The translations under genes and the position numbers were made by a program. From Magallana gigas (lineage: Eukaryota), in assembly GCF_963853765.1 (NCBI RefSeq), contig NC_088858.1:47244001-47308000 (forward strand): a stretch of DNA of 64,000 nucleotides. The letters run 5' to 3'. Shown in pieces: positions 2,845 to 41,853 of the stretch (position 1 is the stretch's first letter; each line of letters starts with the position of its first letter). Below the pieces are notes generated by a model. That model did no database searches, was not told where the DNA came from, and was given only the letters and a program-made list of their open reading frames with translations.

Positions 2845-2924
<80 letters not shown>

Positions 2925-6945: not shown

Positions 6946-7009
6946 AATGTTTTATTTTTTAACTCTAAACTTTATTCCAAATCATTATAATCTTTGCAGT
7001 TGGATTGCC

Positions 7010-10000
7010 ATGGAAACTCTAATTTTGAATTGCGACCTCTTTAATGTAAACGATGAAACAACTAATGAATTTCGGAGAGAAAGGACAAGATACAAAGAAC
7101 AGTTATCTTCCCTGGATTATGTTGGGATTCTGAGCATCGTCAAGGCATTTCAGAACAAAGTATGTGTCAGGGGATTCCCCGGAGCTCGATCTCCTGGTTC
7201 TGAATATGCTGACTTAATACTGACTACTATCCTACAGACAATAAGGTATTGAGTCTCATTGTAGTTTCATTTTTACCATATCTTACATACATCTACATGC
7301 CGTTCTTGTTTCAACTGTGTTGAAATTAAACATGCTTAACGTTACATTTAATCTGTTGCAGATGGAAAGTTGATGAAAATATTTTTCCATCCAACAAGGT
7401 AGAAGAGAGACTGTTGGATTTATATGTAGAGTTGTTAAAATCAGGACCAGGTAGTGGCCATTGTGAGTTACTCCCACTCATTACGAAACATGTTGAGTTC
7501 CAGGTAAATCTTTAGTTTACCGAAGACAGTAATTGTAAGATACAAAGAATAAATAGGTGGAATTTGTTTAATTAATTTTTATCTCATCAGAACAAATACT
7601 CGAAATATTACTTACTTATACACAGTGTATCACTCTAATGTCATTCAATTTATAATCTATGTTTTTGATATTTTCATGGACTTTCATATTTTTATTGATC
7701 GTTGACAGGATTTGTATGGAGACAGTTTACAGAACGTGATTGGTGGATTTAAAGCAATCTCCTATGTAGAAGGGGGGAATGATTCTATATACATTGACAC
7801 GGTTAAAAGGGTGTATCCGGATCAACTCTCTACCTTGGTTATCAGGTACTTTAACAATCTTTTGATATGTCCAATTTATTAATTTCAATAATTTCTTAAC
7901 GAGGTTACACCTGGTACGCTGATGACCCTTTAGGGAGCCATCAATTTAACGTATAACACAATACAGAAATCCATTTAAAATTTAGGAAAATGGTAAGTAT
8001 TTTCCTTTATTTAAGATTAACAGTTTATAAACACCATCATTTAAAAACAATTAAAACTCATTATTTCGTTAACGTGGTTTAACGTGCTACGCTCATGACC
8101 TTTTTAAAGAGCACCCAATTTAAAAAATCCTATCGATTTCATTAAAATTCGTGAAAATATAATATAAGTCTATTCAATGAATAAATAATCAATAGGATGG
8201 AGAACATTAAGTCCACAAAATACGTTGCAAAATGGATAAACCATCCTAACCTTATGTTTTATTTGATATGTTCATATTCAAAATAAGTAGAACTTTTAAT
8301 TGACATTTTTTAATCTAAAAGATAGAAATAGTAAGTTAGAAACACATTTCTAGTCGATTTCCACCAACCTTTATGATTTATCGCATTTGTGGCACTAATC
8401 GTGGACCAATCTCGTTTCTCTTAATTTTAAAATGTCTTCAGCAATAGGCTATCAGAATAGACAATTTCTACAATGAGGTAAATGCTCCTAGACAGGTAGC
8501 TTCCTTATAGTAATCAGGTACAGTATCCACTTGTCAGTTTGTAGTATCCAAGTAAGTAATATACGTTTAAATATGCTATCACTGTCAAAAAAAATGTATC
8601 CATATTACGTAGTTGTTGCTTCCATAGTGGACTGGTATAGTGCCACTGTCTGCAAAGTGAACCCAAATCATATAGCTGCTACTGTCATCAGACACAGTTT
8701 TGAAAAAAGAATATAAGCTAACTGGGATTGCTTAGCAAGAAACATCGATGGCATTAATAAGTACTCTGTCTCACTCGAAACAGATTGGTTAGCCACCATA
8801 TTTATGCTATGTTACAAAGTCTCTAACTTCCAATTTTAGCAGATTTAACTTTCCGCATTTACAAAGTACGTACATTAGCAAATTATAAATAAAATCACAA
8901 AAAACGAAAACCATTGTACTAAAAGTCGTGCATAAACTTAAAAAATATTGTAAAATGAATAGAACATTGTATTATATACTGCATAATAATTGTGACTAAA
9001 CAATGATGTTATAGGAGTGATAAGGAGGATAGATTGAGGTCACCTGAGGTTCATTGTGCCTTAATGGACCTGTTCGTGTTTTACCTGGTCCAGTTACCTC
9101 ATGTGCCGGATACTTTACAGACAGTCTTGATCAGGGCCCAAGACAAAATTTACCAGGCTTATCATATGCAGCCATTCTTTGTGAGTTCTCGCGCGATACA
9201 CCTCCAAATGTTAATTGTTTAATCGTGATGAGAGGTACATTCGATATCATAAATAATTATTGCAAAACAATCAATTTATTATTTAGTATCTTTGTTAGCA
9301 TGGTTTAATTCTGTATAGAAGAGCATTATACCTACGATTTCTTCCTTGTCTCCTAAGAATTTACTCAACTAAATATTCCTACTAAAGATCATTCATCTTC
9401 ACATTCACACGTTTAATGAAGTAATTAGCTGTATGGGTTGATTTAAAATGACTGTACCCATCCATGGAATTCAAACATTCGATATTTTATAATCTTGATA
9501 TTTTTTTATTATCATCTTTTGACCAGGGAATACAAGATGCTGGATTCTATCGCTCGCAGCTTTTACGAGTTGTTGATTTTATCAAGGATCCCAAATTCCC
9601 TCAAAATAGACAAATTTGTGAGACCACATATCGAAAGCTTCCAAATATTCTGCAAATAAAGTATGAACATATGTATACTTTTCTCAGTTTAGTAGTCAAC
9701 AAAGATTTCAAACAGTAATTTATATACAGAGATTGCAGCATTTCGTTTTTCAACGTTCCACGTTTTATTTGGCTGTAGGGATGGAAAGATGATTGCTGAA
9801 GTCTATGCAGATATTTGCCAGCTTCTGAAGGAGATAAGTTTGAAGCGTCTGACAGGAGAGAATACAGATCTACTGAAGAAACTCGACTGTTTTTATAAGG
9901 AAATCCCAATAGAGTGTTTTAAGGTTTGATGAGATAAGTGTACATTAGCTTGTTGATATGCTAGAGTTGAATGATTATAATTATTTTTTAATACATTAAA

Positions 10001-13000
10001 CAATTGTAATGTTTGTGACGTCACAATTTGATGCATTTATGATTTTATCAATCAATAATCTAATTCTGGTTGTAACGCACTTTCTGATTGGCTAAAAAAT
10101 TATTTTATATCGTATAAAGAATGTTGCCTACGTCATAGTAAGACTAACGTCAAAAACGTATCAATAAGCCTGACGTTACGTTTGAATTTTGTACAATTTT
10201 ACATCATTTTAAAGGTCAAATGACAGTTTTTCTCTACAATGAAGAGTAAAAAAATTAAATTATAAGCAATAAATTCAATATTTACTAGTTTTATACGATA
10301 TAAAATGGTTTGCGGTTTATAAAGCGTAAATTGCCCCAAACCATTTTATATCGTATAAAACAAATAAATATTGAATTCATTCCTTAAAACAATAATTTTA
10401 ACAGAATCCTCATATTTTTGAAACGTGGGCTGCTACATCTCAAGAGATACTGGAGAAATCTCCACATGAAAAGATAACAGGGAACGAGCTGGCATATACC
10501 ACCGATAGATTCACCGATAATCTAAAACCAAAGTAAGATAACAGATAACACATACAATACACAAAGAACTTTCGTATATACATTATAATTATTTGATGTA
10601 ATTTTTTGCAATGCTCTACAAATTAACTTATGTAGGTTTGGAAAATTGACACAAGGTTGTCTGGAAGTTATGTGATATTAATAGCAATAAGAATAGACCT
10701 CATTTCTTTTAGTGCCAATTTAGGAAAGATTTGGCTGTCCGTCATCGGAGGATTTTGTGGTTGGGTTCATGAAAAACTCATGAGAGCTGCAGAAAGAACT
10801 CTTAGCACAAATCAGTGGAAAAGTTGCTGGAAATGGAAAGTAAAGGGAATTGACAACCTTAAAGGGACTTAGACATGATTTGAGCCCAACGTTTTCAGTT
10901 TTGTTTTGTTTTTTGTTATGTCTAAAATGGTCAATATCGATGGTTATTTTAAAGATTTGTGAAAATTTGAATTCAAATTTCGAGTTGCAAGCGAGTTACA
11001 GAGGTAAGAATTCTTTGTTATGTAAACAAAGCTCGAGTCTTGTTATGTTTTACGTATGTGTTGTATTGGTTTTAGTTTTTTTGTTGCTGATTACATTATT
11101 TATGATCACATAAAATTAGTGTATCTTCTTTGTACAAGTTATTTTGTCAAAGAAAAAGTAATTTCTTTTCTTTTGATTATTTGTAAACAATAATAAGACG
11201 AGCTTTGTTTACAAAACAAAAGCCTTTTACCTCTTTATCTCGCTTGTAACTTGAATTTTAACATTCAAATATTAGTAAATCTTTCAAAATACACAACTAA
11301 ACCATTTTATACATATAAATAAGACATAAAATTTTCATTTCAAAGGGTTCCCCAACCTTGCAAATGAATTCAAAACTATTAAATCTGAATTCTAAAATGC
11401 TCAATTCAGTTTGAACGTTTTAAAAAAAAATAAATTGAACTTAGCAAATTCGTTTCTACAGCAATGATTATTCTATGTTAAAAGTAAGAAAATAAAAATC
11501 AGTTTTAAATATTTTTCCTTCATTTCAACGTATGGTACACAAATTTTTAATCAAATTTTAACTTTATTTTTAGGAAAATATCTCTATAGCAAAAGCAATG
11601 ATTAAAGCCCTTACGAATGCAGATTATTCCTCTGTTGAAAATGCAGAAGATTACTCCTCCAATGCGGAGTCGTTCCTGGAAAAACTCTTGGATCAGTTAA
11701 TGTAATGGCGTGTTGTCTCTTAAAGGGGCATAGTCACGATTTTTGTCAAAATTATTTTTCCGATTTTACAATGCTTCAGTAAGGCATTTTTAATAGGCAA
11801 CAAATATTTGAGATTAATTCGTTGAGTTATAAGCGAGTTACAGAGCTTACAATTTGCAATGTAAACAAAGCTTTTGTTTACATTTGAAATGTTAAAGTTA
11901 AATTGTTATTTTTTTACCCAAATTGAATGCGTTAAACGTTAGGAACTCTTTATTTATGCTTAAAATGAATAAGAACAGAGACAAATCAGGCCGAAAAAGA
12001 TTTTTTCTGGTATATTGGACTGATGTAAACAAAAACAGGGTACGAGCCTTGTTTACATGACGAAAAATTACGAGCCCTTTTTCTCGCCGATAACTCTCCT
12101 ACTGACTCTCAAATTTCATTTTATCATTAGATATGCATTCCTAAAACATTGCAAATATCAGTCACAGAAAAATAGTATTTGAACAAAATCGTGACCATGC
12201 CCCTTTAATTCTAATATGATTTTTCTAAGTGAACTATCTAGCTGGGTTTACAATATCAACGTATTATTATGACAGTTGTTTTTATCATTTGCAAGGGAAG
12301 GGGTGGATTTGGGTTAAAAACGGAAGATAAATTTTTCAGACTTGTGAAAGTGTTCAAGGATGTCGAGGTAGAAGTAGCAGAGCTAGCCATGGTTACCATG
12401 GAAGCATTTGGAAAGGGGGTAGCCGTGGATAGACTATGCAGAACAGCTAGTGAAAAGATGTCATTAATGGTATGTTTTAGATATAATGATGCATAAAACA
12501 AGCACACTTCAAGCGGTGGTGGGTATACTTTAGATTTTTTATATTACGCGATTACTAAATTCCGCATATCAACGGTTTTGCATCAAATTGCAAGAATATA
12601 AAATCGCGAACGCCTGATTTTAATCATAATTCCAAAAGTGTACATTTGTCCGAAAAATAGAAGCGAACTTTTAACATCCGTGAGATGTGCTTTTCGCGAT
12701 TTTACGCGGATATGAATTCCTCGCATTTAATTAGGAATTTACGGTACGTCAAATGAACTGGACAATTGATAACGACGTGTTAAACATATACTCTACTATC
12801 TCTTTGGTAAACCAAAAATTACAAGAATTAAAAGAAAAGTGTACATTATAATCATACACATATCTTTATGTGTATGTTATTTACATTATATAAATAGTGC
12901 CCGTTTTGGAGGATTACAGTTAAAATTGACACCATAGTCAATCGACGCGAAGCGGAAGTTGACAATGGTTTTTTCGATGGGTGTCAATTTCAAATGTTTT

Positions 13001-16000
13001 TATTATTTATTTCTTTAGGGATGACGTTAATTCTACGGCGAACTGTACGGACATATTTTACACGCATGAAACAATTCGTTGTGTTACCTGTTGCCATGTC
13101 TGTTGCTAACGTTTAGGGAAATAGAACCGATTATAAACTGCGTTTAAACTAATCAAATTTAAGTATTTAACGTAAAAAAAATTAATTATGCTAATTGACG
13201 ACCAATATGCATGCAGGTATTATTTCTGATGTTTGGGGTAAGGTATTTGTGATCTGTAATGAATTGTTTTGTTTGATCAGAAACATTTGAATAAGTTAAA
13301 TACCAATCGTTTCCTTTATTGTTTGGAACAACTTTAACTTGTAAGACAAAACGTTCAGTAAAAACAATATAAAACAAGTGATTTCTAATTGTATTAAGTT
13401 ACACCATTGGAGTGTAATTAGATAGTTCAATAAAACAATCGAAATAGCAACTGGGACCATCGTAGGGACATAAGGTTTCAAAAGAGAAAATAAAGTTTTA
13501 TTTTTGATTATGGACAATTATGCACAATAACCATTTCAGAATAGCAAGCACCTGATAAAGGGTTACCTAGAAAGGTTTCTGTGTCTCCTGAAGAATGAAG
13601 ACTTTGATTGGGATGGTGGTTGGATAACAACAGCAGGGGTCGATTTCTGCAATAATCTCATCAAGTCATCCGGGTAAATGTTTCAATGATTTATTGAAAC
13701 ACAAATAATATATCCTATTCATTGCGTTTACGTAATTCGCACTTGAAAGAAAATAATCTCTGTTAATAAGCTACAATGGATGTTTGATCTTACAATCACT
13801 TAAAGAATTTTTTGCCGTTGTTAAAATATACAAATTAGAATATTTGTTAACTGAAAATGAAAGCAGTATTAAAAATCTTAAAAGTTGGAAAATTAATACT
13901 AACCTTTATTTCAGTGGTGATGAGGTGCGTGACTTGGAAATGGACGAGGCGTTCATACAGGTGTTCCTGTTCTGTCTGTCTGAGGACAGAGAATACATCA
14001 GTCTTCAAAGACAGCATCCAAACATATTTGGATTGGTAGCAGTGGCTGGACTTCCACAATACACCAATCTGGTGAGGAGAAACACTTACTATCATTAAAT
14101 TTTAATTTTAACATCCTAACTGCCCTCTTTAATAGGACTTTCCACATATCATGTAGACTCTTAATACAAAAAGTACATTTAGTAACCACCTTAAAACAAT
14201 GTACAATTAATTATTAAAGTGCCGAATCACTGGCTGTGACTCTTTCTTTAAAAAGTGTCATTTGCTAAGGATTCTGTGAATAAGCTGTATTAAATGCATA
14301 GGGAACGCACGTGCATATTTTTCTAGATCTTATTACGTTATGAGGCATAATAACTAATATTGGCTTCAGAACCACTTGTTAATCAAAAAAGGACCGTAAC
14401 CTCATCAAAGTTCAAATAAGGAAATTTTGGAAAATAGTTTTTTTTTCTAATATTATCTATAACTTATTTGGCATATACATATTGTATATAAAAATCATCA
14501 CTTAATAAGATAGATATTTATGTTCTTATATGAAGAACAAGCAGATTGTGTGGAATCATAGAACCAATTATAATATCAAATACCCTTTCCCGGGTCGATA
14601 AAACTTCTTATCTAATTTCAATTTTTAAAAATGAAATTCAATCAAGGGGATTCAATCAAAGAGTGCACTCACTTCTCTTGCCTTAAACAAATGTCTTTTT
14701 CTTAATTTACAGCACACCGGGAAGACAACTATAGGACGGCTGAAGCCTTTGTTTCCCCACATCCAGCGTTTGATGGATGATGACGACGAAATGATAAAGA
14801 CAGTTATGAGAACAGTTACAAGGATCCTTGGGGAAGAGGTGACCCAGATAATGGACACTCAAGGCATGGAAAATCTCATTAGTCTGTATATCAAAGAGAG
14901 GGACCTTGCCACACTTGGTAAGTGACATTGGTCTCAAAAACAGCGAATACCTGTTTTAATTTGGTATTTAAAATAAGCCGGATCATCAATTAGGCTGGTC
15001 CTTCGTGCTTGACCTACATTAATGGCATTAGTATTTCACACCTACTTAAAGAATAAGGAATCAATTTTTGAATTATGAGATGATCAAATACGGTTTGGGT
15101 GATAAAATCCTATAAAACCCTACTTTTGATCACCCCAATCGCATATGATCATCTCATTATATTCATTCAAAGAATGATTCCTTATTATTCATATTTATAT
15201 AATTTTCAGCTACTGTTCATTTAAACATTAACTCATTGACTATTTACGGTATTTTCATTTTGTAAAATAATGCAAACCTCGTCTTGTACCCCACCCGCTT
15301 CATTGATGGATTGCATTCTACTATATGTCAAAAAATTGATTTGTTGAGTTGTAGAGTACGACAAAATAAAACACTTAAAAAATGTAAAATATTTTGTGAC
15401 AACAGCCAGTATAAAAAATTTTGTCGTCCAATCACACTGGATAATCATAAAGGACAGTGATATTGATATAAAGGAGAAAGATCTTACTTAATCTTGGGAG
15501 ATCCTATGATATGTGCTTGTGATACCATATTGTTTACGACGAGTGTAACGATGCCAGATTTGATAAGAAAAACAATTAACCGGAGACCAAAACTGAGCGT
15601 GTTCTAAAGGACGTTGTTAGGAACATATTAACATACATTTAATTTGTTTCATTTGATGAGCTATTTTTACATGTCTAAGTTACTGTAATCAATGACATGT
15701 GCTCAATTTAAAAGAATATTCATCAATTAAGATGGATATTTTTTCTCTTCTTTTTCGCAAGTATGGTCTATAATGACTTAAATAGTCATCTTTGTTAGAC
15801 ATGATAATGTTTATTATTCTAAATTATTTGAAATTTAATAACCCTTTTGTTTATTTTTAATGAATTCAATTAATCCATATTACACCTGTATCGATAAAAG
15901 TTTTGAACAAAGTTATGTCATTAAGTTTGTTTCAGCATCTTTTAGAAAAGAAATTCCATTAGTTGAAAAAAAAATGAATTTAAAGGGATTTGGACACGAT

Positions 16001-21171: not shown

Positions 21172-21575
21172 TGCTTTAATATTTAATAAGAAATAATAAC
21201 TCAAACAGGATAACAAATTATATTCAAATATTTTTTTACCATATATCGCTAATTTAAAATCATGCAAATAGGGTAAGGGCCATGTTATGGCTGAACTTAG
21301 TGAGTGTTGCATGTTATGTTGAATCTAGACAAGGGACACATTAGAAATGTTTAAAATACAAAATGTTTTCTTGTATTTGAATTACCACATGTGATAAAAA
21401 TTATTTCAACCGTTACTTTGTTATCTTGAAAATAGTGCGAGCTTTATATGTAAAGAATTCTAAAGATTATCTGAAATTTACCAAAAATTGGCACTAAAAA
21501 TAATTGCCCCAATGATAAATGAAAAGATAGAAATTATATTTATAAAATAGTAAAGTAATTTTGTCTAAAGTATCA

Positions 21576-22060: not shown

Positions 22061-23931
22061 TCATGCTGTTTAAACGGAACCTGTTGAAATGTACGACATT
22101 CAAACACTTTTCATCTTCATTTTATTCTTTTTTTTCATCAGGCTCATAAGTATTTATTTTAGCAGTCTAGCTCAGCAAGTGTGCGACTATTTTTTGATCT
22201 GTGATGTATATTTTATTTTTCATGCCTTTTGTTTAACAACCCCATTCCCCTTTGAAACAAATCTTCCTTTAATCATAACAATTTTTTTTATCAATTCCCA
22301 ACGCCCTACAATGAGCCGTGTAGTTTTCATTATATCAATGGAGAATATATGTTCATTAATTCAACATTTTACAAAGAACTGAATAAATTCAAAAATATAC
22401 GGGTCGTATGAAAATAAGAGCAATGCCTTGCGTAAAGTCAGGCGCAAGAAGTTCGATGCAATGTTTTTGGGGGGTTTTTTACATCAAATTTAATATACTT
22501 TCTTATTGACATACGAGTTGCTTTTATTATTTTTAGGAAAAGGACTAGAAGGATTCCGAGGCATGCATCGGATTTTAAGGAATTTTAAATCCATGTATAT
22601 ATTTCCATACATAAGAATGAAAATAAACTATGAACTATCACAAGTTTAAAACTCATAGTTAATGCATTACATTTGCATCTAAAAAGTGATACATGTATGA
22701 TATTGAAAAACATTGTTTTTGCCTGGTGTGTTAAATGATGTAAATATGAATATTTCTAAAAATATTGAATGCAATACTACATACTCATTGTCTATGCTTT
22801 ACAAAATAAATCATCTTTTCATTCGTTGTTATCTTTTTACTTATTTTTTCTGTGACATACAGGAAAATTGGAATCTTTCAGGTTTACATTTTAGCAATAC
22901 CATTTGGTATTTTATTACACTTAAAAAGTATGGGCAGGATCTTGCATTTAATCATTTAATCTCTGTGAAGTATATAAATATCGTTTTCCTTTTAGTTCTT
23001 GCACTTTAAGAACAAAATGTAAATTCATAGCTGAACAATTTTGACCTACACACCTGAATGATTAGATAGACTTTTAAAGATGAAAATAAATTGCAGATAC
23101 CAAATAGTGCAGTTTCACGTTGTTTTCCCCTGCAATGAAAAAAAAGTATATGGAGAAAATCAATACACGTCTGATAGAACTGGGATCACATCCTGAAAAC
23201 AAAATGAAGAATTCTGATCGATAAAGTTGGTAACTATTTTGTTCACGGTTGGATGAGTAAAACGTACTAAAGGGACACCCATGTGCTGGTGGTTTTGAAT
23301 AGATGTAAGTGTAAGTTATCGTTGTTTAGTCTTTAATTTACCAGCTGTTGAATGGTCAAGTTTAAACCCGAGAAATATAAGTGGTTTATAAGACTTCAAG
23401 ACTTATGTGTGGGTGTCAGAACCTGGTATCTCCATAAACGGAAAGTGACACATGGAAATGGATCCGAAGCATTAGATGATGTGTAAACAATAAGGTACGT
23501 ACAATGTTCTCTCACAATTATTTAAGTGTATTGATGATAATATCCCCTCTAAACTAGAGTTTAAAGCATTGATTTGAAACAACGAGTACATAATGAATAA
23601 ATAAATTCTTTTCTGTTGTTGATTGCTTCTAATAAAGACTTAAAGAATCAGACATTTCCATGTTCTGCTGGCCATGAAGACTGGTATCAGTGTTAAGGGA
23701 GGGTGTAATACCAAGTAGAAGCTACAGGTAATTTGTTATTGCATGTCACGATGGATATTTAAATGTCTTGGGTAATTATGTAGAAAATGTTAAATGTTTT
23801 ATTGAATATATGAAAATTTTATGAGTTTATTTTATTATGTTTTTTGAAATTTTTTGATGTAAGAGGGACCTTTCTCAAGTTATGTGTAAAATTGAGGAAA
23901 TTTTATTTCAAATTATTACAGTTGAATTGTA

Positions 23932-32822: not shown

Positions 32823-32861
<39 letters not shown>

Positions 32862-33052
32862 ATTCTGATCACATTTTGTCCGTCTGTCTGTCCGTCTGTC
32901 CGTTTGTAAACTTTTCACATTTTGAACTTCTTCTCTAAAACCACTTAATAAACTTCAACCAAATTTGGCTCAAAGCATTCTTATGGAAAGATGAATATAA
33001 ATTGCAGAAATGAAAGAAAAATTTTCATTGAAAGCGGGGAAAACCTCAAAAC

Positions 33053-33098
<46 letters not shown>

Positions 33099-34091
33099 GC
33101 ATTTTAAAAAAATCTTCTTTTCAAGACCTACTGAGGCAAATTCAACGTAATTTAGCAGGAATAATCCTTATGGGAAGGAAAATATAAATTGCAAAAATTA
33201 TGGGCTAATTCTGTTTCAAATCTGAGTTATAACGAAAATAATAAGAAAGAAAAGGGGGGGGGGGTATACCTATACTTCCAAAAAAAAATCTTACCTACAA
33301 AGACTTTTTTCCCCCAAATCATGAAATTCCTAATCCAGGGGGGGGGGGGGGGGGCTACTATGCCTATGACTCCAACTTCTCAATCTTTAAAGGTAAATTT
33401 AGGAACAATTATCTTTGCTGCGAGAAAAAGTGGGGGGGCTGATTGGTATGTCCCTAATGGTTAAGTCTAACTTTGCAAAAAAAGTGGGGGGGGGGGGGGC
33501 TAAGCCCCCCTAGCCCCCCGGTTCCGACGCCTATAGGGTCGATCTGACAATGATGAATTTGTTTGTTGTGCAACAGTTCGTGTACGAAGGGAATCTTTGA
33601 AACATGCAAAATACATTGGTGCCGATTTTTGTTAAGTAAATTGAGGCCAAATATTTCAATGCATTGACAGTTTTCACATATGACGGTGGTGTTAGCTTGT
33701 TGTGATTTTCGTTTCGTTGTTTTCATTTATGCTTTGCGTTAACCTGGGAACTGTCGCTTGTATTTCCTGATTGTTACGTATCAAATCAAACAGAGACTTC
33801 GGTAAATCAAACAGTTTACTATTTATCTGCGCAAATTAAGCAACATCTGATGTATTAAGAAAGAACTAAAATGCAATTCATTCAGGCTATCGCTAATTCG
33901 GTATCATCTTTTGCGTAATGGTAGAATAATGCAATATGTTTTGTTGAGATGCTCGGCATTTTCTCGAGTTTATTCAGTTTAAATAGAGTTTAATATCGCT
34001 GACGGAAATATGTAGGTACATGTATATTATTACTTATTAGGTTAGTTACTGACTCACTACGGAAATATATTGGGTTGATCAAGCCGAGCCG

Positions 34092-34124
<33 letters not shown>

Positions 34125-37100
34125 AGTGAGTCAGTAACTAACCTAATAAGTGTTTTGTTTTGCCCGAGGACTATCAAGCGACATATTTATTCACAAATAG
34201 CGATGATCTACGCAAAACCATGTACAAGATGCTTAACATTTCGTCCAATTTAAGTTAAAAACCCATACACACTCTTCAAAATTTTCAATCTCACCTTTCA
34301 AATACTCTTTAAAAATCTTTGCTTCGCCCATGTTTACTTACAATGTTTTGTTGCTTTCAATTTTGAATGTATTTTCCCTTTTTCTGCAGAGATCTGAGCA
34401 AATTTTGACGCTGCCATTTTTTCTGCTCCAGACAAAACAATGTGACGTCAATATTCTAAGGGCAACTACTCTAATTTTAAAGAATTTCAAAGGGCAACTA
34501 CTCCAAATACTTTAAGAACTTACGGCATGCTGTTTATGTATTAAATATACTATGAAATGTCGAAATGAGTAAGCGAAGCGTCGGCCAATGACGGCCATAT
34601 TGCCTAATATTGATATATGAGGCAATCACTTGCTATGTTTAAACCAATGAAAGTGTGACATTTCAGTCCTAGGGAAAACAAACATGTATATGATTCGTTT
34701 TGAAAAATAAATTGTGTTCTTTATTTGTTATAGTGCATGTTTCTTGTGTTTAATTGTTTAGAATTTCTATCTACTTACCATATTTGAGTGTTAAGCTTCG
34801 AATTATAAGCAAGATACAGAGGTTTGCTCATACACAGATCTGAGGCCATTCATTTTTTTCCATTTTAAATGCCGAATAGGAAATACCAAGTTAAAAATCT
34901 TAAGCTGAATGTAATAAACTCATGTGAACAAAATATGACTCAAAACTAGCAAAATTTTTAGCTCATCTTGCTTATAATTCTACGATTGACGCTGAAATTT
35001 TGGTTGATCATTAGAAATTCTATATGAATTAGAGTATGTTAAATACTTGTACAAAAAAAAATTAAAGAATGATATGCTGTATATAACTACTCTCTGGGGC
35101 CCCCTCTTTATACAATGAATAATATAAAATGTGAGTAAATAAAAACGACATCGTTAAAACAGTTTCCATAGTTCTGACACATTTCTGTTGCGGGGATAAA
35201 AGAATTATCGCTATTCCTAAGAAAATCTTACAGCGGAAAATTATCCTGGTTTGTAGCTATTTGTTATTTTTGAATAAAAATGAAAATAATAGGTGGGCCA
35301 TAGTAAATTAGAGTGATGCGTCTGTCAATATGGTAACATTGATTTTTATAGCTCTTTAACATGTCACGTGACAATTTTTCATTCCAGTGTATTCATCAAT
35401 CAAGTGTGAGTAAAGTTATAAAAGTTACGAGTTTACGCGAGGTAAACAACAGTCATTTAATTATAATGGAGAAGACAAATTAAATTGTTGAATATTTTTG
35501 ATTTGAGAAATTGAGCGCATTGAGGTGCAATTTTCTTCTTCACATATATACATGTAGGATTTTTTTGATAAAATACAATAACTATTGTATTTTAAAAAAA
35601 AAAATACAATAACTAGTAAGTAGTTCAGGAAGAAAATGTACCTATATGCTGTCATATATTTTGATCGCTTTATGAAGTGGGGGAGGGGGGCAGAACGAAA
35701 ATACAGGGAATTAGAAGTTATATAACAGTGTACCCCTACCAAATATTTACGTCTATATCTTGCGTAGGATTTTCTTATTCTGTGTAAAAACAGTATTTCA
35801 TGAAGGTACAATGTCGAAGATTACGTGTATGCAAAAATAAGTGTAAAATTCGAATACTTTACAATATTTATTTTTTTGTTATTCTACCGAGGGCCATCTG
35901 GCACAATATTTTTGAACGCCCATTGTTGCTCAGGTGAGCGATGTGGCCCCATGGGCCTCTTGTTTCCAGTTATTCTAGCTGATTTTTTATTAAAGGTTTT
36001 AAAATAAGGTTGGAATTTATAAAAATAGCGCTAGAACCTGACATCGAAATTATTTCAATTAGTTCGTGTCACTTACATCTAAAATGCAAAACGATGACAT
36101 GAATTGGTATCATATTTGATGCATGGTAGTAGAAATCTCTGATTGTTCTCATGGACTGAGACCCTAATCCGAGTCTTCTGTTTTAGATGCCATATCTTCT
36201 GGATACGAGGGTCACTCTGAAACACTAGCTTCCCAGTTCCTTCCTTTGATCAAAGCATGTACACAGAAAACTCAAACCAATGAGATAGAGATGCAGACAA
36301 TGTTCCTGAAAAAAGTCGCAGAAAAACAGCCAGAGGTAAGATGGTTATTCAATGTTAAGTTTCATAACGTATGAACTTTATTAAAGTTAAGAAATTATCT
36401 TATAGGTTTATTAGGAATATAAAATAGTGAAAGATACAAAGATGTCTGATTGAACTAATAGTGATCAGATTCATTCTCAGATTAAGTAAAAAGACTAAAG
36501 AAATATTTACTGAATGGATTTGTCATCGATGAAAAAATTATTGATACCATTAAAAGCAGCTCTATTTCATTGTGACTGATCAATTTTGAAACACCAAATT
36601 ATTCCATTCATAGATATTTACAAAAGAACCTCTTGATCTTATTTTCAAACATCACTTCATGGAAAAAAATGCCAACCCTCAAGTCCTTATGGTACTGGAT
36701 GTTGTATCCAAATCACATGCAGAAAACCTGGAACCTTATGTCGAGAGTCATCTGATGAAGACTGATTTAATGATGGAACTTATGGCTCATTATCAGTTCA
36801 ACATTTTAATCCGGATAGCAGCCAAATGCAATGTATGTCTACAGTATAATCTCGAGAATAATGATTTGGTTTTGTTTTATTATTTTAACAATTAAAAATG
36901 AGGTTATATAGATATCATTTAAGCATTGAGTGTTTACTGTGTGAGGAAATGAAATCGTTTATTCACTTTGATTGTAGAATAAGCAAAGCCTTGTATATTC
37001 CTATTTGATGAAACGCCTAAAGGAATCTAATATTGAGCAAGTTCAAAGTGCATGTATACAAGGATTGCGGGAAATGCATTCAGTCTTTGGAAAATATATA

Positions 37101-40100
37101 TTTTCTGAAAAAGATAAGATGTATATAGAGAAGATCAAGGAGAAAGGGGCTTCTAAAACTGTAACTGACCTGGTGGAAAATCTATTGAATGAGCTGGAGG
37201 GTAGGAGGTGTGTGCTTTGTTTTACTGTCTGAAAATGAAAGACACTTGAATTGGTGCCTAAACAGGCTTCCAAATGAGTTTTATCATAAAAGGTTTTAAG
37301 GTCATCATTTCTATATTCTAATACAATTAAATTGGTATTGTCGTTACCAACATGAACACATTCTGAGATCAAATTTTTTACAAATCTTAATTTTTTTTAT
37401 CAGTGTGTCAATATCATAAAAAATCTTTTTGATTTTAGCATAGCAAAAGTATCTAAAGACGTTGAAGAGCACTCTGGACAAATTGAAAAGCTAGAGATTG
37501 GAGTAGCAGGGACAAAGGTGGTGCTTAAAAAAGTCCATCAAGATGTCAAAGAACAGAGAAAGGAGCTTGAGGGAGTTAAACAGGGACTGGGAGAAGTCAA
37601 CACACGAGTGGACAAGGTAGAGGTGGATGTGGCGGATACCAAAGAAAGGGTGGAAGAAGTAGATAAAAAGGTAGTAGAATTTATTCATTCTCTCATTTAT
37701 TAATAAATGTACATCATACAGAAACAGTGCACAAACTTAATTGTCAGAACTATTTTCGTCCCATGTGAATGAGAAATATAATCATACATGTATATCATTC
37801 ATACTGATATGTAATAAAAACAATACTTCTGTTTTAATATGCATATGTTGGGCCTTTGCCAATTATTGTAATTGTGTTTGTGCCAATAAAATATTTGTAT
37901 TTCTATTCATTGTTCGTATGTTTGCTTAATTCACATTAAAGTCATAAAATCAAATTGTTTCCTTTGAATAAATCTATTATCACTGTTTTCTAGTAGAAAA
38001 AGTAAACCATTTTGTATTTCATTTTATGATAGAACTGAGTCCTTCATCAACTTTTATCCACTTTAATCTGATTTGTTCTCACTTGTGTTATAGACAATGA
38101 GTAATGCTCCAACTTGGTCTCGTGATGTCACAAAACTACTGAACCCAGATTCTGAACATGACTGGCGGCTTTTGGCTAGTCGCCTTGGTTACAGTCCTGA
38201 TGACATCAGAGGGTGGGCTACCCAATCAGATCCCTGCATGGCTCTTCTGAGTGAATGGTACGCAACGCACAAAACGTTCGAGGCATCAAGAGGAGTGTTG
38301 ACAATTTTGCAGGAAATGAATCGATTGGATGCTGCCATTATTGTTGAGAATGCAATGAAAGCTGCAGGTGAATAAAACTTCTATCATAAATAATTGCTTC
38401 ATGTACCTCCTAATATAAATAAAATTAGTGTAGTGTGGTAACATATTTTGCCCCAATCAAGCATTTAAACACATTTATCTTGCATGTCGACATATTCGAC
38501 AGTAAAATAAGTTGCATGAAGGAAGACAAAGTATGCCACCATAAATTAATTTATAGATTTTTTATCATTTTTAATATACTTGTTTCTGTGCAGAGGTGGT
38601 TGTGACTGATGAACCTGTTGACTACCCAGAACCCCCTGAAATCTTCCTTAGTTACCAGTGGAGTCACCAGAACGAGGTCAAGCTGATCTGTCGTCACCTT
38701 GAAATGGCAGGGTATAAATGCTGGATGGACATTGGTCAAATGGGTGGTGGGGATAAGTTATTTGAGAAGATTGACTCAGGGATAAGGGCAGCTAAAATTG
38801 TGATATCATGTGTCACAGGAAAATATGCTAAATCGCCCAACTGTAACAGAGAGGTAAAAGTTTATGAGGAAATATTTATTTGTCGTAAATAAGATTGTTC
38901 ATTCCAGAAAAAAAAACTAATGCTTAAAATCAATTTGTGTTAGAAGTGTTTACAGTAATAAACTGCAAAAAATTGTGATACTCTTTTTTCTTTCTTAAAA
39001 AAATTAAACATAAAATGTAGATCATGTAAAATAATGTCATATTGATTAAAAAATATTTAAGGTTATTCCAGGTCAATTTGTCTGTAAACCTTGGTAAGCC
39101 AATGATTCCTTTGTTGATGGAAAAGATGGCTTGGCCTCCTGCAGGTTCCATGGGGCCGATTTTCAGCGAGTACCTGTTTATTCGTTTCTTTCAACGACCA
39201 GGAGAGGAAACCAATGACGACCGAATCTGGTCAGCTGCTAAGTTTACTGAACTTCTCATGCAACTTAACTACTTAAAAGTTATGCCAGATGAAGGAAATA
39301 TTTCAGAAAGTAAGCAAGTTTCATTGTTCAGAAGCAATCGTGAGTATCGAACACTTTAATGATAAACTAAACATTATTTAAAAGAGTCACAGTGGACCTA
39401 AAAATATGTCTTTATTTTGTTTTGAAAATAAATAAATGTTTGATGTTAAGTATACCTGGCTGCTTTTTACTGGTGTATTACAGTGTATAAGAACTGGTGG
39501 GTTCCTGTTGTTGAAGAGATCGTCATTCCAAAAAGAAATGAGAAAAGGGGAGAAAATAAAGCATTTTCGTCTGATCAACATCAGGTATAGTTCCAAGTTA
39601 TTCTTTCTATCATTTTTTTTTTTATTTTTAACGTATGGAGATTCAAAATGGAAAATGTTTACATCATTTCTCCATTCTGAAGTACTAGGGACACCTCGCA
39701 TAATTTTTGGGAGTTGATTTTAATCAACTCGCCTATGCAGTTACTCTGGCAAACCGAAAGTGAAACAGTGTTTGGGCCTAATCACAAATCATCACCGCTG
39801 ACAAGACTCAGTTCTTGAAAATAATAGAAAAATTCGATGTAATGTAAGCTGAAGCATTGTTTTTCAAGAAAACGTATCTATAAACACTTTGAAAATACTC
39901 AGATTTTATATAATACGAACAATTTAGATATTTTTGTAGTCTCATGTAATCCTACGCCAGAGTTTTATATAGTCTCGTTCAACCAAACGCTCGGCTGTCT
40001 CCGTAAATCTCCGACAAGCAGAGAGGATCTCATGCTTTTCGGAGATTAACGGAGACAGCCTTACGTCTGGTTGAACGAGACAAGAGTTCGATATCAATAG

Positions 40101-41853
40101 TGCTTGGATCCATACAATTTTTAGAATTGTTTCAATTACTAATACATAGTTTGAAATCTCGAAATTCTTGATTGAAAAGTCTAAAAATTCATATTATAAA
40201 AAAGTGCACAATTCAAATACAGACTAAAAACTAATTGCCACGCAAAATAAGTCGATTTTAAAATAAATGATAATCGATAAAATCAACTCCCGTCAGTACT
40301 TCAGTACTTTGATTAGCATTATCATCCGAATGTTGTTTGCAATGCAAAATCCCCTCAAACTTTCTATTTTTGGTTGTGTAATGAAACCTGAAGCGGTAGA
40401 GGGGGTGTTTCAGAACAGATAATCTGGACTTTTTCCTTCTAGTGAATGAGCTAGTGTAATTAGGGCTCAAAAGTAATTATGATTATCGAAATATTACATA
40501 AAAACTTGTGAAAGAGTATTCAAGAGTAGAGTATTCAAGTAATTATGGTTTATCAAGTTGGCTCAGGACAGATGTCTTTTAAACGCTCCTGTTGAAAATA
40601 TAAACTGCATTTATATTTCTCTGGATTTTTTCCTGCGATTATTAAGCATCTCTGCTTTAAAAATAATCGGTAAATATTTTGTTTTTCAGACAGAGTCACA
40701 GGTTGTTTCCCCAGATGTGTTTATATCCTACCAGTGGGGCAAACAAAAGGAAATTATTGCCTTGTTCCAGAGACTGACCAGTTTAGGCTTCACCTGTTGG
40801 TTGGACATACGTCAGATGGGGGGAGGGGACTCTTTGTATGACAAAATTGACCGAGGGGTCAGAGGTTGCAAGGTCATGCTGTCGTCAGTGACCACCAAGT
40901 ATGCTCTATCTGCCAACTGTAGGAGAGAGGTCAGCCTGGCTGATGCTTTAAAGAAACCCATCATCCCTATGTTGATGGAGAAAATAGACTGGCCCCCAAC
41001 TGGACCAATGAGCATGGTTCTTACGCAGTTACTTTACGTTAATTTTTCAAATGACGAATCTGTCCAGTTATCATGGGATGGGAAGTATTTTGATGAACTG
41101 TTGTCCAAAATTAGACAACAAATTCCAACAGATGAAAGTAATGATTATGTAAATGTGGAATCAGAGAGTGGTGTGCAGTCACTGAAGAACTCAAAATATG
41201 AAAAGTCTGTATCAAATGGGAATAATCAAAGGCATATAAAACAGGAAATAGAAAAGCCCAGAGATCCAATACAGCCCAGAGATCCAAAACAAGAAACTGA
41301 AAAGCTCAGAGATCCAATACAAGAAACTGAAAAGCCCAGAAATCCAATACAAGAAACTGAAAAGCCCAGAGATCCGATACAGGAAACTGAAAAGCCCAGA
41401 GATCCAATACAAGAAACTGAAGAGCCCAGAAATCCAATACAGAAAACTGAAAAGCCCAGAGATCCAGTAAAGGAAACTGAAAAGTCCAGAAATCCAATAC
41501 AGGAAACTGAAAAGCCCAGAGATCCAATACAGGAAACTGAAAAGCCCAGAGATCCAATACAAGAAACTGAAAAGCCCAGAAATCCAATACAGGAAACTGA
41601 AAAGCCCAGAGATCCAGTAATGGAAACTGAAAAGTCCAGAAATCCAATACAGGAAACTGAAAAGCCCAGAGATCCAATACAGGAAACTGAAAAGCCCAGA
41701 GATCCAATACAGGAAACTGAAAAGTCCAGAAATCCAATAAAGAAGCAGCCCTCAGTTACAGTGGGTTCCACTGAACGGCTGACTAATCCATTACAGAATA
41801 CAGCTAAACCACGCCCAACAGACACGAAGTCGTCAACTTGTTCTATATTATGA
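23932..41853 (+). CDS. Gene B: paralog of gene A, helical N-terminus + coiled coil + Death + TIR_2 + TIR_2 + repeat tail + CaaX, about 1610 aa
   Basis: Exons 23932-24167, 24285-24426, 24846-24982, 25980-26145, 26610-26743, 27178-27322, 27559-27686, 27839-27965, 28207-28334, 28480-28609, 29447-29580, 29804-29960, 30775-30979, 36187-36335, 36614-36832, 36978-37207, 37439-37670, 38094-38367, 38594-38853, 39072-39309, 39484-39584, 40690-41853. Lengths match copy A exon for exon except exons 19 and 22; I found no stops in this path. Confidence 0.88.
26777..27070. mobile_element. G/C-run MITE with 16-bp TIRs
   Basis: CAGGCACGTAGCATCG ... CGATGCTAGGTGCCTG (1 mismatch); long G and C homopolymers inside; absent from the gene A intron. 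Confidence 0.8.
31019..31985 (+). mobile_element. HINE/Helentron-like non-autonomous element
   Basis: 5' TTATTACGGGCCGC, 3' inverted GCGGCCC followed by the hairpin TTGACGC-tt-GCGTCAA and a CTTGTTT end; similarity to the gene A intron stops at 31019. Confidence 0.65.
32007..32304. mobile_element. MITE with about 45-bp TIRs and CTTGTCAGAT subrepeats
   Basis: TATGGTGGCATAGATC.GCCA.CACTTGTCAGATAATTATGT at both ends in inverted orientation. Confidence 0.85.
32824..35965 (+). mobile_element. HINE/Helentron-like (pearl/CvA-type) element carrying nested insertions
   Basis: 5' TTTTTAGCTCACCTGAGC..GCTCAAGTGAGC then a GTCCGTCT microsatellite; 3' inverted GCTCAGGTGAGC (35928-35939), GGCCC-CAT-GGGCC hairpin and CTTGTTT end. 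Confidence 0.8.
34032..34151. repeat. Perfect 51-bp inverted repeat with an 18-nt spacer
   Basis: Arms 34032-34082 and 34101-34151 are exact reverse complements. Confidence 0.92.
39970..40083. mobile_element. Fold-back mini-MITE (TAGTCTCGTTCAACCA... termini)
   Basis: Imperfect arms of about 45 bp; lies in a gene B-specific expansion of intron 21. Confidence 0.75.
41242..41740 (+). repeat. Coding minisatellite, 30-nt unit x16 (QETEKPRDPI), in the last exon of gene B
   Basis: Visible tandem units CAGGAAACTGAAAAGCCCAGAGATCCAATA; frame open through to CSIL*. Confidence 0.96.

What the first reader, a model, noticed from the sequence alone, without database searches (positions are those of the whole stretch)
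7010..41853. Duplicated helical-repeat / coiled-coil / Death / tandem-TIR protein with NADase-type glutamates: candidate membrane-anchored enzymatic immune executor
Seen: both paralogs encode about 930 aa of helical sequence, a Val-rich heptad exon, a Death domain and two TIR_2 domains reading KSPNCNREV and LSANCRREV. Established: a Glu at this alpha-C position is the catalytic residue of NAD+-cleaving TIRs (SARM1, plant TNL TIRs, bacterial ThsB-type TIRs), whereas TLR and MyD88 TIRs act as scaffolds. Inference: the layout resembles SARM1 logic (helical autoinhibitory or sensor region, oligomerisation module, enzymatic TIR) but adds a Death domain and a covalent TIR pair. It could couple Death-domain signalosome assembly to NAD+ depletion or cyclic ADP-ribose-type messenger production. 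I do not recognise a characterised protein with this architecture.
Basis: partly seen in the sequence, partly recalled or inferred. Interest (0 to 1): 0.82.

Follow-up and report, generated by a model that had tools for sequence, protein, structure and literature searches.

The report
Oyster solenoid–Death–double-TIR gene cluster
Two neighbouring oyster genes (a third lies just upstream) encode a large, probably lipid-anchored immune-type protein with two TIR domains of the SARM1/bacterial enzyme class; the family is already catalogued in invertebrates but its function, including whether it cleaves NAD+, is untested.

Summary
I built two 22-exon genes on the + strand: A at 7010-21171 and B at 23932-41853. 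Each encodes an 855-aa HEAT-like solenoid, a 78-aa Val-rich heptad coiled coil, a Death domain, two TIR_2 domains, a disordered tail and a C-terminal CSIL box. A third full copy lies just upstream of the window.

RNA contigs confirm seven splice junctions of gene A. Gene A has a 1-nt deletion in TIR1 in this assembly. Three other runs carry the missing T, so A is probably intact.

The architecture is not new. It is "ecTIR-DC family 6", also called "MyD88-like with Armadillo fold". It occurs from molluscs to amphioxus and I found no functional study.

For an enzyme role:
- Both TIRs match NAD+-cleaving TIRs (SARM1, Cat1, AbTir, SPARTA) far better than MyD88 or TLR TIRs.
- Their Glu aligns with SARM1 E642 and is invariant in the core family.

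Against it:
- The aromatic residue of the WxxxE motif is an invariant Asn.
- A Glu at this position is common in non-enzymatic TIRs.
- AlphaFold2 gives no fixed TIR pair.

New points here: a CaaL prenylation box in 123 of 135 relatives, a predicted parallel coiled-coil self-association, and a Death domain closest to p75NTR. NADase activity is plausible (about 0.4) but unproven. A cyclase product is unlikely.

The parts
7010..21171 (+). Gene A, 22 exons, 1452 aa if the deletion is read through with X. Exons: 7010-7245, 7362-7503, 7709-7845, 9015-9180, 9527-9660, 9779-9923, 10405-10532, 10713-10839, 11574-11701, 12340-12469, 13540-13673, 13915-14071, 14713-14917, 16640-16788, 16987-17205, 17370-17599, 17841-18072, 18264-18537, 19371-19629, 19871-20108, 20250-20350, 20485-21171
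   Evidence: Family-HMM hits are collinear. Splice-site search and assembly give all GT-AG introns. The protein aligns gaplessly at 97.7% with RefSeq protein P0182. RNA contigs confirm the junctions of exons 14-22 except 17/18, which is supported only by loose ends.
23932..41853 (+). Gene B, 22 exons, 1611 aa, intact. Exons: 23932-24167, 24285-24426, 24846-24982, 25980-26145, 26610-26743, 27178-27322, 27559-27686, 27839-27965, 28207-28334, 28480-28609, 29447-29580, 29804-29960, 30775-30979, 36187-36335, 36614-36832, 36978-37207, 37439-37670, 38094-38367, 38594-38853, 39072-39309, 39484-39584, 40690-41853
   Evidence: Exon lengths equal those of A for exons 1-21, apart from A's 1-nt deletion. 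All introns are GT-AG and the reading frame is open. The last exon's 31-mers are held at 0.51-0.53 by two runs on record as RNA.
7010..17599 (+). Gene A exons 1-16: N-terminal HEAT/ARM-like alpha-solenoid, aa 1-855. The gene B equivalent is 23932-37207.
   Evidence: AF2 model of P0182:1-855 has pLDDT 88, pTM 0.73 and 43 helices. Foldseek hits are SF3B1, CAND1, importins and PP2A-A, all at probability 1.0.
17841..18072 (+). Gene A exon 17: Val-rich heptad coiled coil, aa 856-933.
   Evidence: 11 heptads, 15 Val in 78 residues, period 3.5. Modelled as three copies it gives a parallel in-register coiled coil: ipSAE 0.83, best of 3 controls 0.01.
37439..37670 (+). Gene B exon 17: Val-rich heptad coiled coil.
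18264..18537 (+). Gene A exon 18: Death domain.
   Evidence: Pfam PF00531, E 4.2e-11.
38094..38367 (+). Gene B exon 18: Death domain.
   Evidence: The nearest solved sequence is the p75NTR death domain at E 1e-7. MyD88 scores only E 0.08.
19371..20108 (+). Gene A exons 19-20 (19371-19629 and 19871-20108): TIR1. The Glu codon is 19627-19629.
   Evidence: RNA contigs show junction 19629|19871.
19419..19425 (+). T7 run in gene A exon 19, one base short compared with gene B. This shifts the frame and gives a stop at aa 1054.
   Evidence: DNA alignment of A against B and translation. Contigs of X15 and X17 (RNA) and X1 carry an extra T after 19418 and T>C at 19423, which restores ..PEIFLSYQW...
38594..39309 (+). 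Gene B exons 19-20 (38594-38853 and 39072-39309): TIR1. The Glu codon is 38851-38853, the last codon of exon 19.
   Evidence: Pfam TIR_2, E 2.7e-18; gene model.
20485..21171 (+). Gene A exon 22: TIR2 (Glu codon 20722-20724), an 80-aa disordered tail, the CaaX box CSIL (21157-21168) and the stop codon.
   Evidence: Pfam TIR_2, E 1.2e-19; CaaX statistics.
40690..41853 (+). Gene B exon 22: TIR2 (Glu codon 40927-40929), a 239-aa tail, the CaaX box CSIL (41839-41850) and the stop codon.
   Evidence: Pfam TIR_2, E 1.1e-18. SARM1 is the best PDB sequence hit, with Glu aligned to E642.
41273..41739 (+). 30-bp x 15.6 tandem repeat inside gene B's last exon. It encodes ETEKPRDPIQ-type decapeptides that lengthen the tail between TIR2 and the CaaX box.
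   Evidence: Tandem Repeats Finder, 90% matches, score 766; translation.

Best explanation
Identity. These are two of three tandem paralogues of a conserved invertebrate gene family, ecTIR-DC family 6, also called ARM-Death-TIR-TIR or 'MyD88-like L'.

Anatomy. Each protein is cytosolic with no transmembrane helix. In order it has:
- an 855-aa HEAT-like solenoid;
- a parallel heptad coiled coil;
- a p75NTR-like Death domain;
- two SARM1/bacterial-class TIR domains joined by a disordered linker;
- a disordered tail that ends in a CaaL box.

Inferred mechanism.
1. The CaaL box is geranylgeranylated and tethers the C-terminal TIR pair to a membrane.
2. The coiled coil, possibly with the Death domain, holds several chains together.
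3. The solenoid is a regulatory or ligand- or partner-binding part, by analogy with the ARM domain of SARM1.
4. When released or clustered, the TIR domains associate between chains and hydrolyse NAD+ using the conserved Glu. TIR2 is the obligate catalytic unit.
5. Because the WxxxE aromatic is Asn, the expected products are nicotinamide and linear ADP-ribose, not a cyclic ADPR isomer.

Shown here: gene structure, expression of A, domain identities, conservation, TIR class and CaaX conservation. Inferred: lipidation, oligomeric state, autoinhibition and catalysis. The confidence of 0.4 is for the whole statement including catalysis; the identity and anatomy alone I hold at about 0.9.
For: - Gene models and expression.
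- Both copies are under purifying selection: dN/dS is 0.20 overall and 0.07-0.085 in Death, TIR1 and TIR2, with dS 0.26.
- TIR class: Pfam TIR_2 scores 67-71 bits against 18-20 bits for TIR. The family profile of TIR1 hits Cat1 at 6.6e-9 and SARM1 at 8e-9, but MyD88 only at 0.075. The TIR2 profile hits AbTir at 4e-7, Cat1 at 2e-6 and SARM1 at 7e-6, with no MyD88 hit at E<=1.
- Foldseek on the AF2 model puts SPARTA TIR-APAZ and SARM1 TIR first.
- The Glu aligns with SARM1 E642 and with the Cat1 catalytic Glu.
- The Glu is invariant in TIR2 in 45 of 45 relatives and in both TIRs across 41 core members from molluscs to amphioxus.
- The Gly-rich BB loop QMGGGD is invariant, and its last Gly aligns with SARM1 G601.
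- A CaaX box is present in 123 of 135 relatives, with X = L in 93. No hydrophobic 19-mer exceeds a Kyte-Doolittle mean of 1.45.
- Coiled-coil self-association is modelled at ipSAE 0.83, best of 3 controls 0.01, partner pLDDT at least 88, and runs agreeing in at least 89% of contacts. That mark was reached by 21 of 30 proteins solved as pairs of one chain and by 0 of 23 solved as single chains. The calibration used two copies, not three.
- The solenoid is confidently modelled.
Against: - No enzymatic or lipidation data exist for any family member in the papers I could search.
- The Glu is common in non-enzymatic TIRs (PMC7075850).
- The WxxxE aromatic is an invariant Asn. Mutating this residue lowers SARM1 and AbTir activity and abolishes L6 and ROQ1 activity (bioRxiv 10.1101/2022.05.07.491051).
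- AF2 shows no confident TIR1-TIR2 arrangement (pTM 0.52).
- Structural similarity to MyD88 and Hydra TRR-2 TIRs (TMt 0.73-0.83) is not much lower than to SARM1 (0.66-0.76).
- A Death domain is typical of adaptor signalling.
- Panpulmonate snail members lack the CaaX box.
Confidence: 0.4

Rival explanations
1. It is a non-enzymatic scaffold or adaptor. The two TIRs recruit TLR or other TIR proteins and the Death domain recruits DD kinases or adaptors. The protein would then be a large, membrane-tethered MyD88-like hub, and the conserved Glu and BB loop would serve TIR-TIR contacts.
For: - The Death plus TIR combination has led authors to list these proteins as MyD88-like (PMC9334734; UniRef name 'MyD88-like protein L1' for P0249).
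- Transduction of TLR signals was proposed for the lucinid clam homologue because it is co-expressed with TLRs in gills (PMC6836662).
- The Glu is frequent in the non-enzymatic TLR1/2/6/10 TIRs, and only SARM1 is a known metazoan NADase (PMC7075850).
- The WxxxE aromatic is missing.
Against: - Both TIRs are far closer to enzymatic TIRs than to MyD88 or TLR TIRs by profile search.
- The BB loop lacks the RDxxPG box-2 proline of MyD88 and TLRs and reads QMGGGD instead (PMC7075850).
- The Death domain is closest to p75NTR, with MyD88 only at E 0.08.
Confidence: 0.35
2. Only TIR2 is catalytic. TIR1 is a regulatory or pseudo-enzyme partner that completes or gates the TIR2 site.
For: The TIR2 Glu is invariant in 45 of 45 relatives. 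TIR1 has Gln, Leu or Thr in divergent members, including acorn worms (Glandiceps, Ptychodera), a bdelloid rotifer (Adineta) and unnamed metagenomic eukaryotes.
Against: In the core family, which includes these oyster genes, TIR1 keeps the Glu and every other motif. Its dN/dS (0.084) is as low as that of TIR2. AF2 shows no fixed TIR1-TIR2 contact.
Confidence: 0.15
3. Gene A is a pseudogene, truncated before TIR1 by the frameshift, and only gene B is functional.
For: The window has a 1-nt deletion in exon 19 that gives a stop at aa 1054.
Against: - Contigs of two RNA runs from different studies, and of one further run, carry the extra T at full depth.
- All 21 introns keep GT-AG and no other stop occurs.
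- dN/dS in TIR1 is 0.084.
- The RefSeq orthologue P0182 is intact and gapless against my model.
- The site is a T homopolymer, a typical place for an assembly error.
Confidence: 0.07

Closest known systems
ecTIR-DC family 6 (Gerdol et al. 2017, as cited in PMC6836662). Members include the Loripes orbiculatus gill unigene, Aplysia LOC101850562/LOC101855561 ('MyD88-like with Armadillo-type fold', PMC9334734) and S. purpuratus 'MyD88-like protein L1' (P0249).
   Same: [quoted passage not shown] Full-length homology is collinear. Identity is 50-72% across TIR1-linker-TIR2 with most of the 41 members aligned.
   Different: Nothing structural differs; these genes are members. Not noted in the papers I could read: the conserved CaaL box, the heptad coiled coil, the SARM1-class assignment of both TIRs, and the Asn at the WxxxE position. 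The original Gerdol paper is not in the library, so I could not check what it says.
SARM1 (ARM-SAM-SAM-TIR NAD+ hydrolase)
   Same: The logic is similar: a helical-repeat N-terminus, an oligomerisation module and a C-terminal TIR of the TIR_2 class. SARM1 is the best or near-best PDB hit for both TIRs. The Glu aligns with E642, a BB-loop Gly with G601, and the DVFISY motif is shared.
   Different: There are no SAM domains; a coiled coil and a Death domain take their place. There are two TIRs instead of one. The solenoid is 855 aa and its top 50 fold matches are generic HEAT proteins, not the SARM1 ARM domain. W638 is replaced by Asn. A CaaX tail is present. TIR identity to SARM1 is only about 18-22%.
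MyD88
   Same: It combines a Death domain with a TIR domain.
   Different: The TIR is of a different class (MyD88 E 0.075 for the TIR1 profile, no hit for TIR2). There is no RDxxPG box 2. The Death domain is closer to p75NTR. The protein has an extra solenoid, a coiled coil, a second TIR and a CaaX box.
Prokaryotic NADase TIRs (AbTir, PdTIR, Cat1, SPARTA TIR-APAZ)
   Same: These are the top sequence-profile and Foldseek neighbours, and the catalytic Glu aligns. NCBIfam gives weak hits to retron-TIR and Thoeris ThcB4.
   Different: They carry the WxxxE Trp, which is Asn here. The domain context is eukaryotic.

Membership tests
ecTIR-DC family 6 (ARM-like / Death / 2 x TIR) | Long N-terminal ARM/HEAT-like helical repeat region | tested here: met
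   The AF2 model is all-alpha with 43 helices and pLDDT 88. Foldseek hits are HEAT solenoids.
ecTIR-DC family 6 (ARM-like / Death / 2 x TIR) | Central Death domain followed by two TIR domains | tested here: met
   Pfam finds Death and two TIR_2 stretches in the window ORFs and in P0182.
ecTIR-DC family 6 (ARM-like / Death / 2 x TIR) | Full-length collinear homology to members in other invertebrates | tested here: met
   The family HMM covers positions 1 to beyond 1440 in both genes. 228 relatives score E<=1e-20, from molluscs, annelids, a nemertean, a flatworm, rotifers, hemichordates, echinoderms and amphioxus.
NAD+-cleaving TIR domains (SARM1, plant TNL, bacterial) | Catalytic Glu in the alpha-C region | tested here: met
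   The Glu aligns with SARM1 E642 and the Cat1 Glu. It is invariant across the family. The alignment is at sequence level only; no residue-level superposition was available.
NAD+-cleaving TIR domains (SARM1, plant TNL, bacterial) | Aromatic residue four positions before the Glu (WxxxE) | tested here: not met
   This position is an invariant Asn in both TIRs (S-x-N-C-x-R-E). It aligns with the Cat1 Trp. The role of the Trp is described in bioRxiv 10.1101/2022.05.07.491051.
NAD+-cleaving TIR domains (SARM1, plant TNL, bacterial) | Flexible Gly-containing BB loop needed for the active assembly | tested here: met
   QMGGGD is invariant, and its last Gly aligns with SARM1 G601. The loop has low pLDDT in the model.
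NAD+-cleaving TIR domains (SARM1, plant TNL, bacterial) | Measured Glu-dependent NAD+ cleavage | not testable with these tools
   A biochemical assay is required.
NAD+-cleaving TIR domains (SARM1, plant TNL, bacterial) | Self-association that builds the composite active site | tested here: inconclusive
   The coiled coil is predicted to self-associate. AF2 gives no confident TIR1-TIR2 packing (pTM 0.52). TIR-TIR oligomers were not modelled.
MyD88 | MyD88-type TIR with box 2 RDxxPG | tested here: not met
   The BB loop reads QMGGGD. MyD88 TIR scores E 0.075 against the TIR1 profile and gives no hit for TIR2.
MyD88 | MyD88-type Death domain at the N-terminus | tested here: not met
   The Death domain is central, at aa 934-1024. 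Its best solved relative is p75NTR at 1e-7, with MyD88 at 0.08.
SARM1 orthologues | ARM-SAM-SAM-TIR architecture | tested here: not met
   Pfam finds no SAM domain. A coiled coil and a Death domain are present instead, and there are two TIRs.
CaaX-prenylated proteins | C-terminal Cys-aliphatic-aliphatic-X, with X = Leu for GGTase-I | tested here: met
   Copy 0, A and B all end in CSIL. A Cys at position -4 is present in 123 of 135 relatives, and X = L in 93 of them. Actual lipidation cannot be tested here.

The most novel reading that the evidence does not exclude
This bilaterian-wide family, lost in vertebrates, would be a second animal lineage of NAD+-consuming TIR enzymes besides SARM1. It would be tethered to membranes by geranylgeranylation and switched on by clustering driven by the coiled coil and Death domain. 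TIR2 would be the obligate catalytic unit. The NxxxE variant of the active site would make linear ADPR, or an as yet unknown product.
Probability: 0.3. Interest if true: 0.8.

Novelty: new member of a known kind. Interest (0 to 1): 0.5.

Why it matters
Among animal TIR domains, only SARM1 was known to cleave NAD+ as of 2020 (PMC7075850). This family has two SARM1-class TIRs with an invariant Glu, conserved from molluscs to amphioxus and tandemly expanded in oysters. That makes it an obvious and cheap candidate for asking whether enzymatic TIR signalling is more widespread in animal immunity.

The conserved CaaL box, the predicted coiled-coil self-association and the Asn at the WxxxE position give concrete predictions that mutants can test. 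If the TIRs turn out to be inert, the family is still a conserved, lipid-anchored, MyD88-unlike adaptor that current oyster immune-gene catalogues lump with MyD88.

Tried and rejected
- tblastn of mollusc homologues found only the Death-TIR-TIR exons. The N-terminus needed a family HMM.
- Earlier scan notes near this place: none.
- ESM Atlas feature search of the N-terminus gave only weak HEAT-like leads (MMS19, SYO1; scores below 0.92) and the Atlas has no structure for it.
- Pfam on the N-terminus gave only sub-threshold Adaptin_N and INTS7_N hits in relatives.
- A packed, pre-formed TIR1-TIR2 pair is not supported: pTM is 0.52 and the linker is disordered.
- A transmembrane anchor is rejected: the highest Kyte-Doolittle 19-mer mean is 1.45.
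- The pseudogene reading of gene A is rejected as the main reading.
- Literature searches for NADase work on this family or on oyster TIRs found nothing specific.
- I could not obtain a residue-level structural superposition on SARM1, because the tools return no coordinates. The Glu equivalence therefore rests on HMMER alignments.
- I made no tree of these TIRs with SARM1, MyD88 and TLR TIRs, because no reference sequences were available by reference.
- Expression of gene B rests only on k-mer shares in RNA-labelled runs.

Full report
WHAT IS THERE

The window is AT-rich (GC about 0.32) and comes from an oyster chromosome. Runs that hold it are labelled as oyster metagenome or as one coded organism. 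The best protein matches are from Crassostrea angulata and Magallana gigas.

A self-comparison shows a tandem duplication on the + strand: about 6.1-21.2 kb against 23.0-41.9 kb, at 69-92% nucleotide identity in blocks. Pfam finds a Death domain and TIR_2 domains in the large ORFs of both copies.

GENE MODELS

A search with the TIR2 exon returned many proteins of 1350-1570 aa with two TIR matches. I built a family HMM from 19 of them. It hits stop-free segments of both copies collinearly, from HMM position 1 to beyond 1440.

I then chose splice sites that are shared by the two copies, consistent in phase and free of stops. The result is two 22-exon genes with GT-AG introns throughout and identical exon lengths for exons 1-21.
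- Gene B (23932-41853) encodes 1611 aa.
- Gene A (7010-21171) encodes 1452 aa if one frameshift is read through with X.

Three independent checks support the models:
- The gene A protein aligns gaplessly with RefSeq protein P0182 (C. angulata LOC128175814, 1452 aa) at 97.7% identity.
- RNA contigs from two studies show junctions 16788|16987, 17205|17370, 17599|17841, 18537|19371, 19629|19871, 20108|20250 and 20350|20485. Loose ends match the 18072|18264 junction.
- Stranded raw reads place the first mate on the - strand, as expected for a + strand RNA in most stranded libraries.

THE FRAMESHIFT IN GENE A

Compared with gene B, exon 19 of gene A lacks one base in a T-run (19419-19425). This would give a stop at aa 1054, before the core of TIR1.

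In contigs of two RNA runs and one further run, an extra T follows 19418 and 19423 is C, at full depth. That reads ..PEIFLSYQW.., as in gene B. Every other exon of gene A is open. Between A and B, dN/dS is 0.20 overall and 0.07-0.085 in Death, TIR1 and TIR2, with dS 0.26. Gene A is therefore most likely intact in the species. The deletion is either an assembly error in a homopolymer or a private allele.

A THIRD COPY

A six-frame search of the whole assembly with TIR2 finds a third TIR1/TIR2 pair just upstream of the window. The fetched 20 kb holds a complete collinear copy at G000:C6:47229506-47243518. It matches M. gigas K1Q047 (P0189), mostly at 90-100% per exon (72-89% in a few N-terminal exons), and ends in KKKSSTCSIL. 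This fits the published remark that oyster 'MyD88-like' genes lie in clusters of three or in pairs (PMC4346834), although I did not map their gene identifiers.

ANATOMY OF THE PROTEIN (gene B numbering)

- aa 1-855, alpha-solenoid. The AF2 model of the near-identical P0182:1-855, built with 27 homologues, has pLDDT 88, pTM 0.73 and 43 helices. Foldseek hits are SF3B1, CAND1, importins, the PP2A A subunit and TBCD, which are generic HEAT solenoids. SARM1 ARM is not among the top 50. The region is only 11-21% identical between phyla.
- aa 856-933, one exon. It holds 11 heptads with Val, Ile or Leu at the a and d positions, 15 Val in 78 residues, and a dominant 3.5-residue period. Modelled as three copies it forms a parallel, in-register coiled coil. 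The ipSAE is 0.83 and the best of 3 controls is 0.01. Partner pLDDT is at least 88 and the runs agree in at least 89% of contacts. That mark was reached by 21 of 30 proteins solved as pairs of one chain and by 0 of 23 solved as single chains. The calibration used two copies, so the counts hold only roughly, and the number of strands was imposed, not found.
- aa 934-1024, Death domain (Pfam E 4e-11). Its nearest solved relatives are the p75NTR death domain (1e-7), UNC5 and NRADD. MyD88 scores only 0.08.
- aa 1036-1185, TIR1, encoded by two exons. The Glu codon is the last codon of exon 19.
- aa 1186-1225, a linker that is disordered in AF2 (pLDDT 29-40).
- aa 1226-1370, TIR2, encoded by one exon.
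- A tail rich in Glu, Pro, Lys and Thr. Gene B's tail is lengthened by a 30-bp x 15.6 repeat.
- The C-terminus ..KSSTCSIL.

MEMBRANE ANCHORING

There is no hydrophobic segment; the highest 19-residue Kyte-Doolittle mean is 1.45. The C-terminal Cys-x-x-X box is present in 123 of 135 family proteins from many phyla, with X = Leu in 93 and a KS[KS][ST] prefix. Freshwater and land panpulmonate snail members lack the box.

WHAT KIND OF TIR

Pfam scores both TIRs as TIR_2, the model that also covers SARM1 and many bacterial TIRs (from my own knowledge of Pfam). TIR_2 scores 67-71 bits against 18-20 bits for the TLR/MyD88-type TIR model.

The window's TIR2 has SARM1 TIR as its best PDB sequence hit. 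HMMER places the Glu of ..RREV.. on E642 of ..HKEIV.., the last Gly of QMGGGD on G601, and DVFISY on DVFISY. E642 and G601 are my own residue numbering, counted on the SARM1 sequence shown in that alignment.

Family profiles sharpen this picture:
- TIR1 hits Cat1 at 6.6e-9, SARM1 at 8e-9 and PdTIR at 2e-7. MyD88 scores 0.075 and TLRs 0.05-0.2.
- TIR2 hits AbTir at 4e-7, Cat1 at 2e-6, SARM1 at 7e-6 and TIR-APAZ at 2e-5. There is no MyD88 hit at E<=1.
- In the Cat1 alignments the family's S-x-N-C-x-R-E lies on S-D-W-C-W-D-E.

Foldseek with the AF2 model of TIR1-linker-TIR2 ranks SPARTA TIR-APAZ, SARM1 and C. elegans TIR-1 first. MyD88 and Hydra TRR-2 are not far behind in TM-score.

The Glu is invariant in TIR2 in 45 of 45 relatives. 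In TIR1 it is Glu in 43; divergent members have Gln (5), Leu (1) or Thr (1). Those I could name are acorn worms and a bdelloid rotifer. In a 41-protein core set from molluscs, annelids, a nemertean, a flatworm, a rotifer, hemichordates, echinoderms and amphioxus, both Glu residues are invariant. So are the motifs SYQW, W-x-D, QMGGG, R and Y-x-x-S-x-N-C-x-x-E in both TIRs.

CAVEATS ON THE ENZYME READING

- A survey of TIR domains found this Glu in more than 70% of all TIRs and in more than 90% of TLR1/2/6/10. It states that the frequency of the Glu does not track reported activity, and that SARM1 is the only metazoan TIR with known NADase activity (PMC7075850).
- The aromatic residue of the WxxxE motif, four positions before the Glu, is an invariant Asn here. 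Every cyclase TIR examined by Manik et al. has an aromatic residue there. W-to-A lowers activity in AbTir and SARM1 and abolishes it in L6 and ROQ1. Conservation of the aromatic is weaker in TIRs that make linear ADPR or are inactive (bioRxiv 10.1101/2022.05.07.491051). If these TIRs are active, I therefore expect hydrolysis rather than cyclisation.
- AF2 folds each TIR well (pLDDT 83-93 outside the BB loops) but gives no confident mutual arrangement (pTM 0.52). A 'covalent pre-formed pair' is not supported.

COMPARISON WITH WHAT IS KNOWN

[quoted passage not shown] The authors speculate on TLR signal transduction (PMC6836662).
- ecTIR-DC proteins are described as widespread in invertebrates, apparently absent in vertebrates, and of hypothetical adaptor or regulator function (PMC6321704).
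- The Aplysia immunome paper lists LOC101850562 and LOC101855561 among MyD88-like proteins with an Armadillo-type fold (PMC9334734). These are P0005 and P0202 in my search.
- A sea-urchin member is named 'MyD88-like protein L1' in UniRef.
- I found no biochemical or cell-biological study of the family.

The genes are therefore new members of a catalogued but uncharacterised family. They are not MyD88 or SARM1 orthologues by the tests in the membership table.

VERDICT

My best reading, at about 0.4, is a geranylgeranyl-tethered, coiled-coil-oligomerised protein whose SARM1-class TIRs hydrolyse NAD+ when clustered. TIR2 would be the core catalytic unit and the solenoid a regulatory part. A non-enzymatic adaptor role is nearly as likely, at about 0.35.

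Interest is moderate. The family is known and the enzymology is untested. The predictions are sharp, and a positive result would add a second animal NADase TIR lineage.

Noticed in passing
G000:C6:47229506-47243518 (L001+L002), ending about 480 bp before window position 1: A third full-length tandem paralogue lies here. It matches M. gigas K1Q047 (P0189), mostly at 90-100% per exon, and also ends in KKKSSTCSIL. The locus is therefore a three-gene array.
   Followed up: yes
window 6133-6956 and 23001-23803: The upstream (promoter-side) flanks of genes A and B are also duplicated, at 73% identity over about 870 bp.
   Followed up: no
window 18650-19300 (gene A intron 18) and 32030-32281 (gene B intron 13): These hold 21/42-bp tandem units (TTATTTATGTCGACATGCAAC-like). 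In one run the summed contig depth here reaches 1261-3848, against about 20 elsewhere, so this is a high-copy dispersed repeat. Contigs show rearranged joints here.
   Followed up: partly
window 30980-36186: Intron 13 of gene B is 5.2 kb, against 1.7 kb in gene A (14918-16639). This is probably due to inserted repeats; I did not characterise them.
   Followed up: no
window 52126-53106 (-): An intronless 326-aa ORF carries a dual-specificity phosphatase catalytic domain (Pfam DSPc, E 6e-33) and a Cys-rich C-terminus. It looks like a DUSP12-type gene (the DUSP12 assignment is from memory).
   Followed up: partly
window 43856-44814: Arrays of 21-22/43-bp units are built around the palindrome TGATATCA.
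   Followed up: no
window 58293-58522 and 60826-61262: These hold 47-bp and 51/150-bp tandem arrays.
   Followed up: no
same chromosome, about 274-280 kb before the window (first-stage notes s1-375628 and s1-375682): Earlier unchecked notes describe a Roco GTPase with tandem TIRs and a CaaX tail, and an asymmetric TIR pair. If correct, the tandem-TIR-plus-CaaX cassette is reused in other architectures nearby.
   Followed up: no
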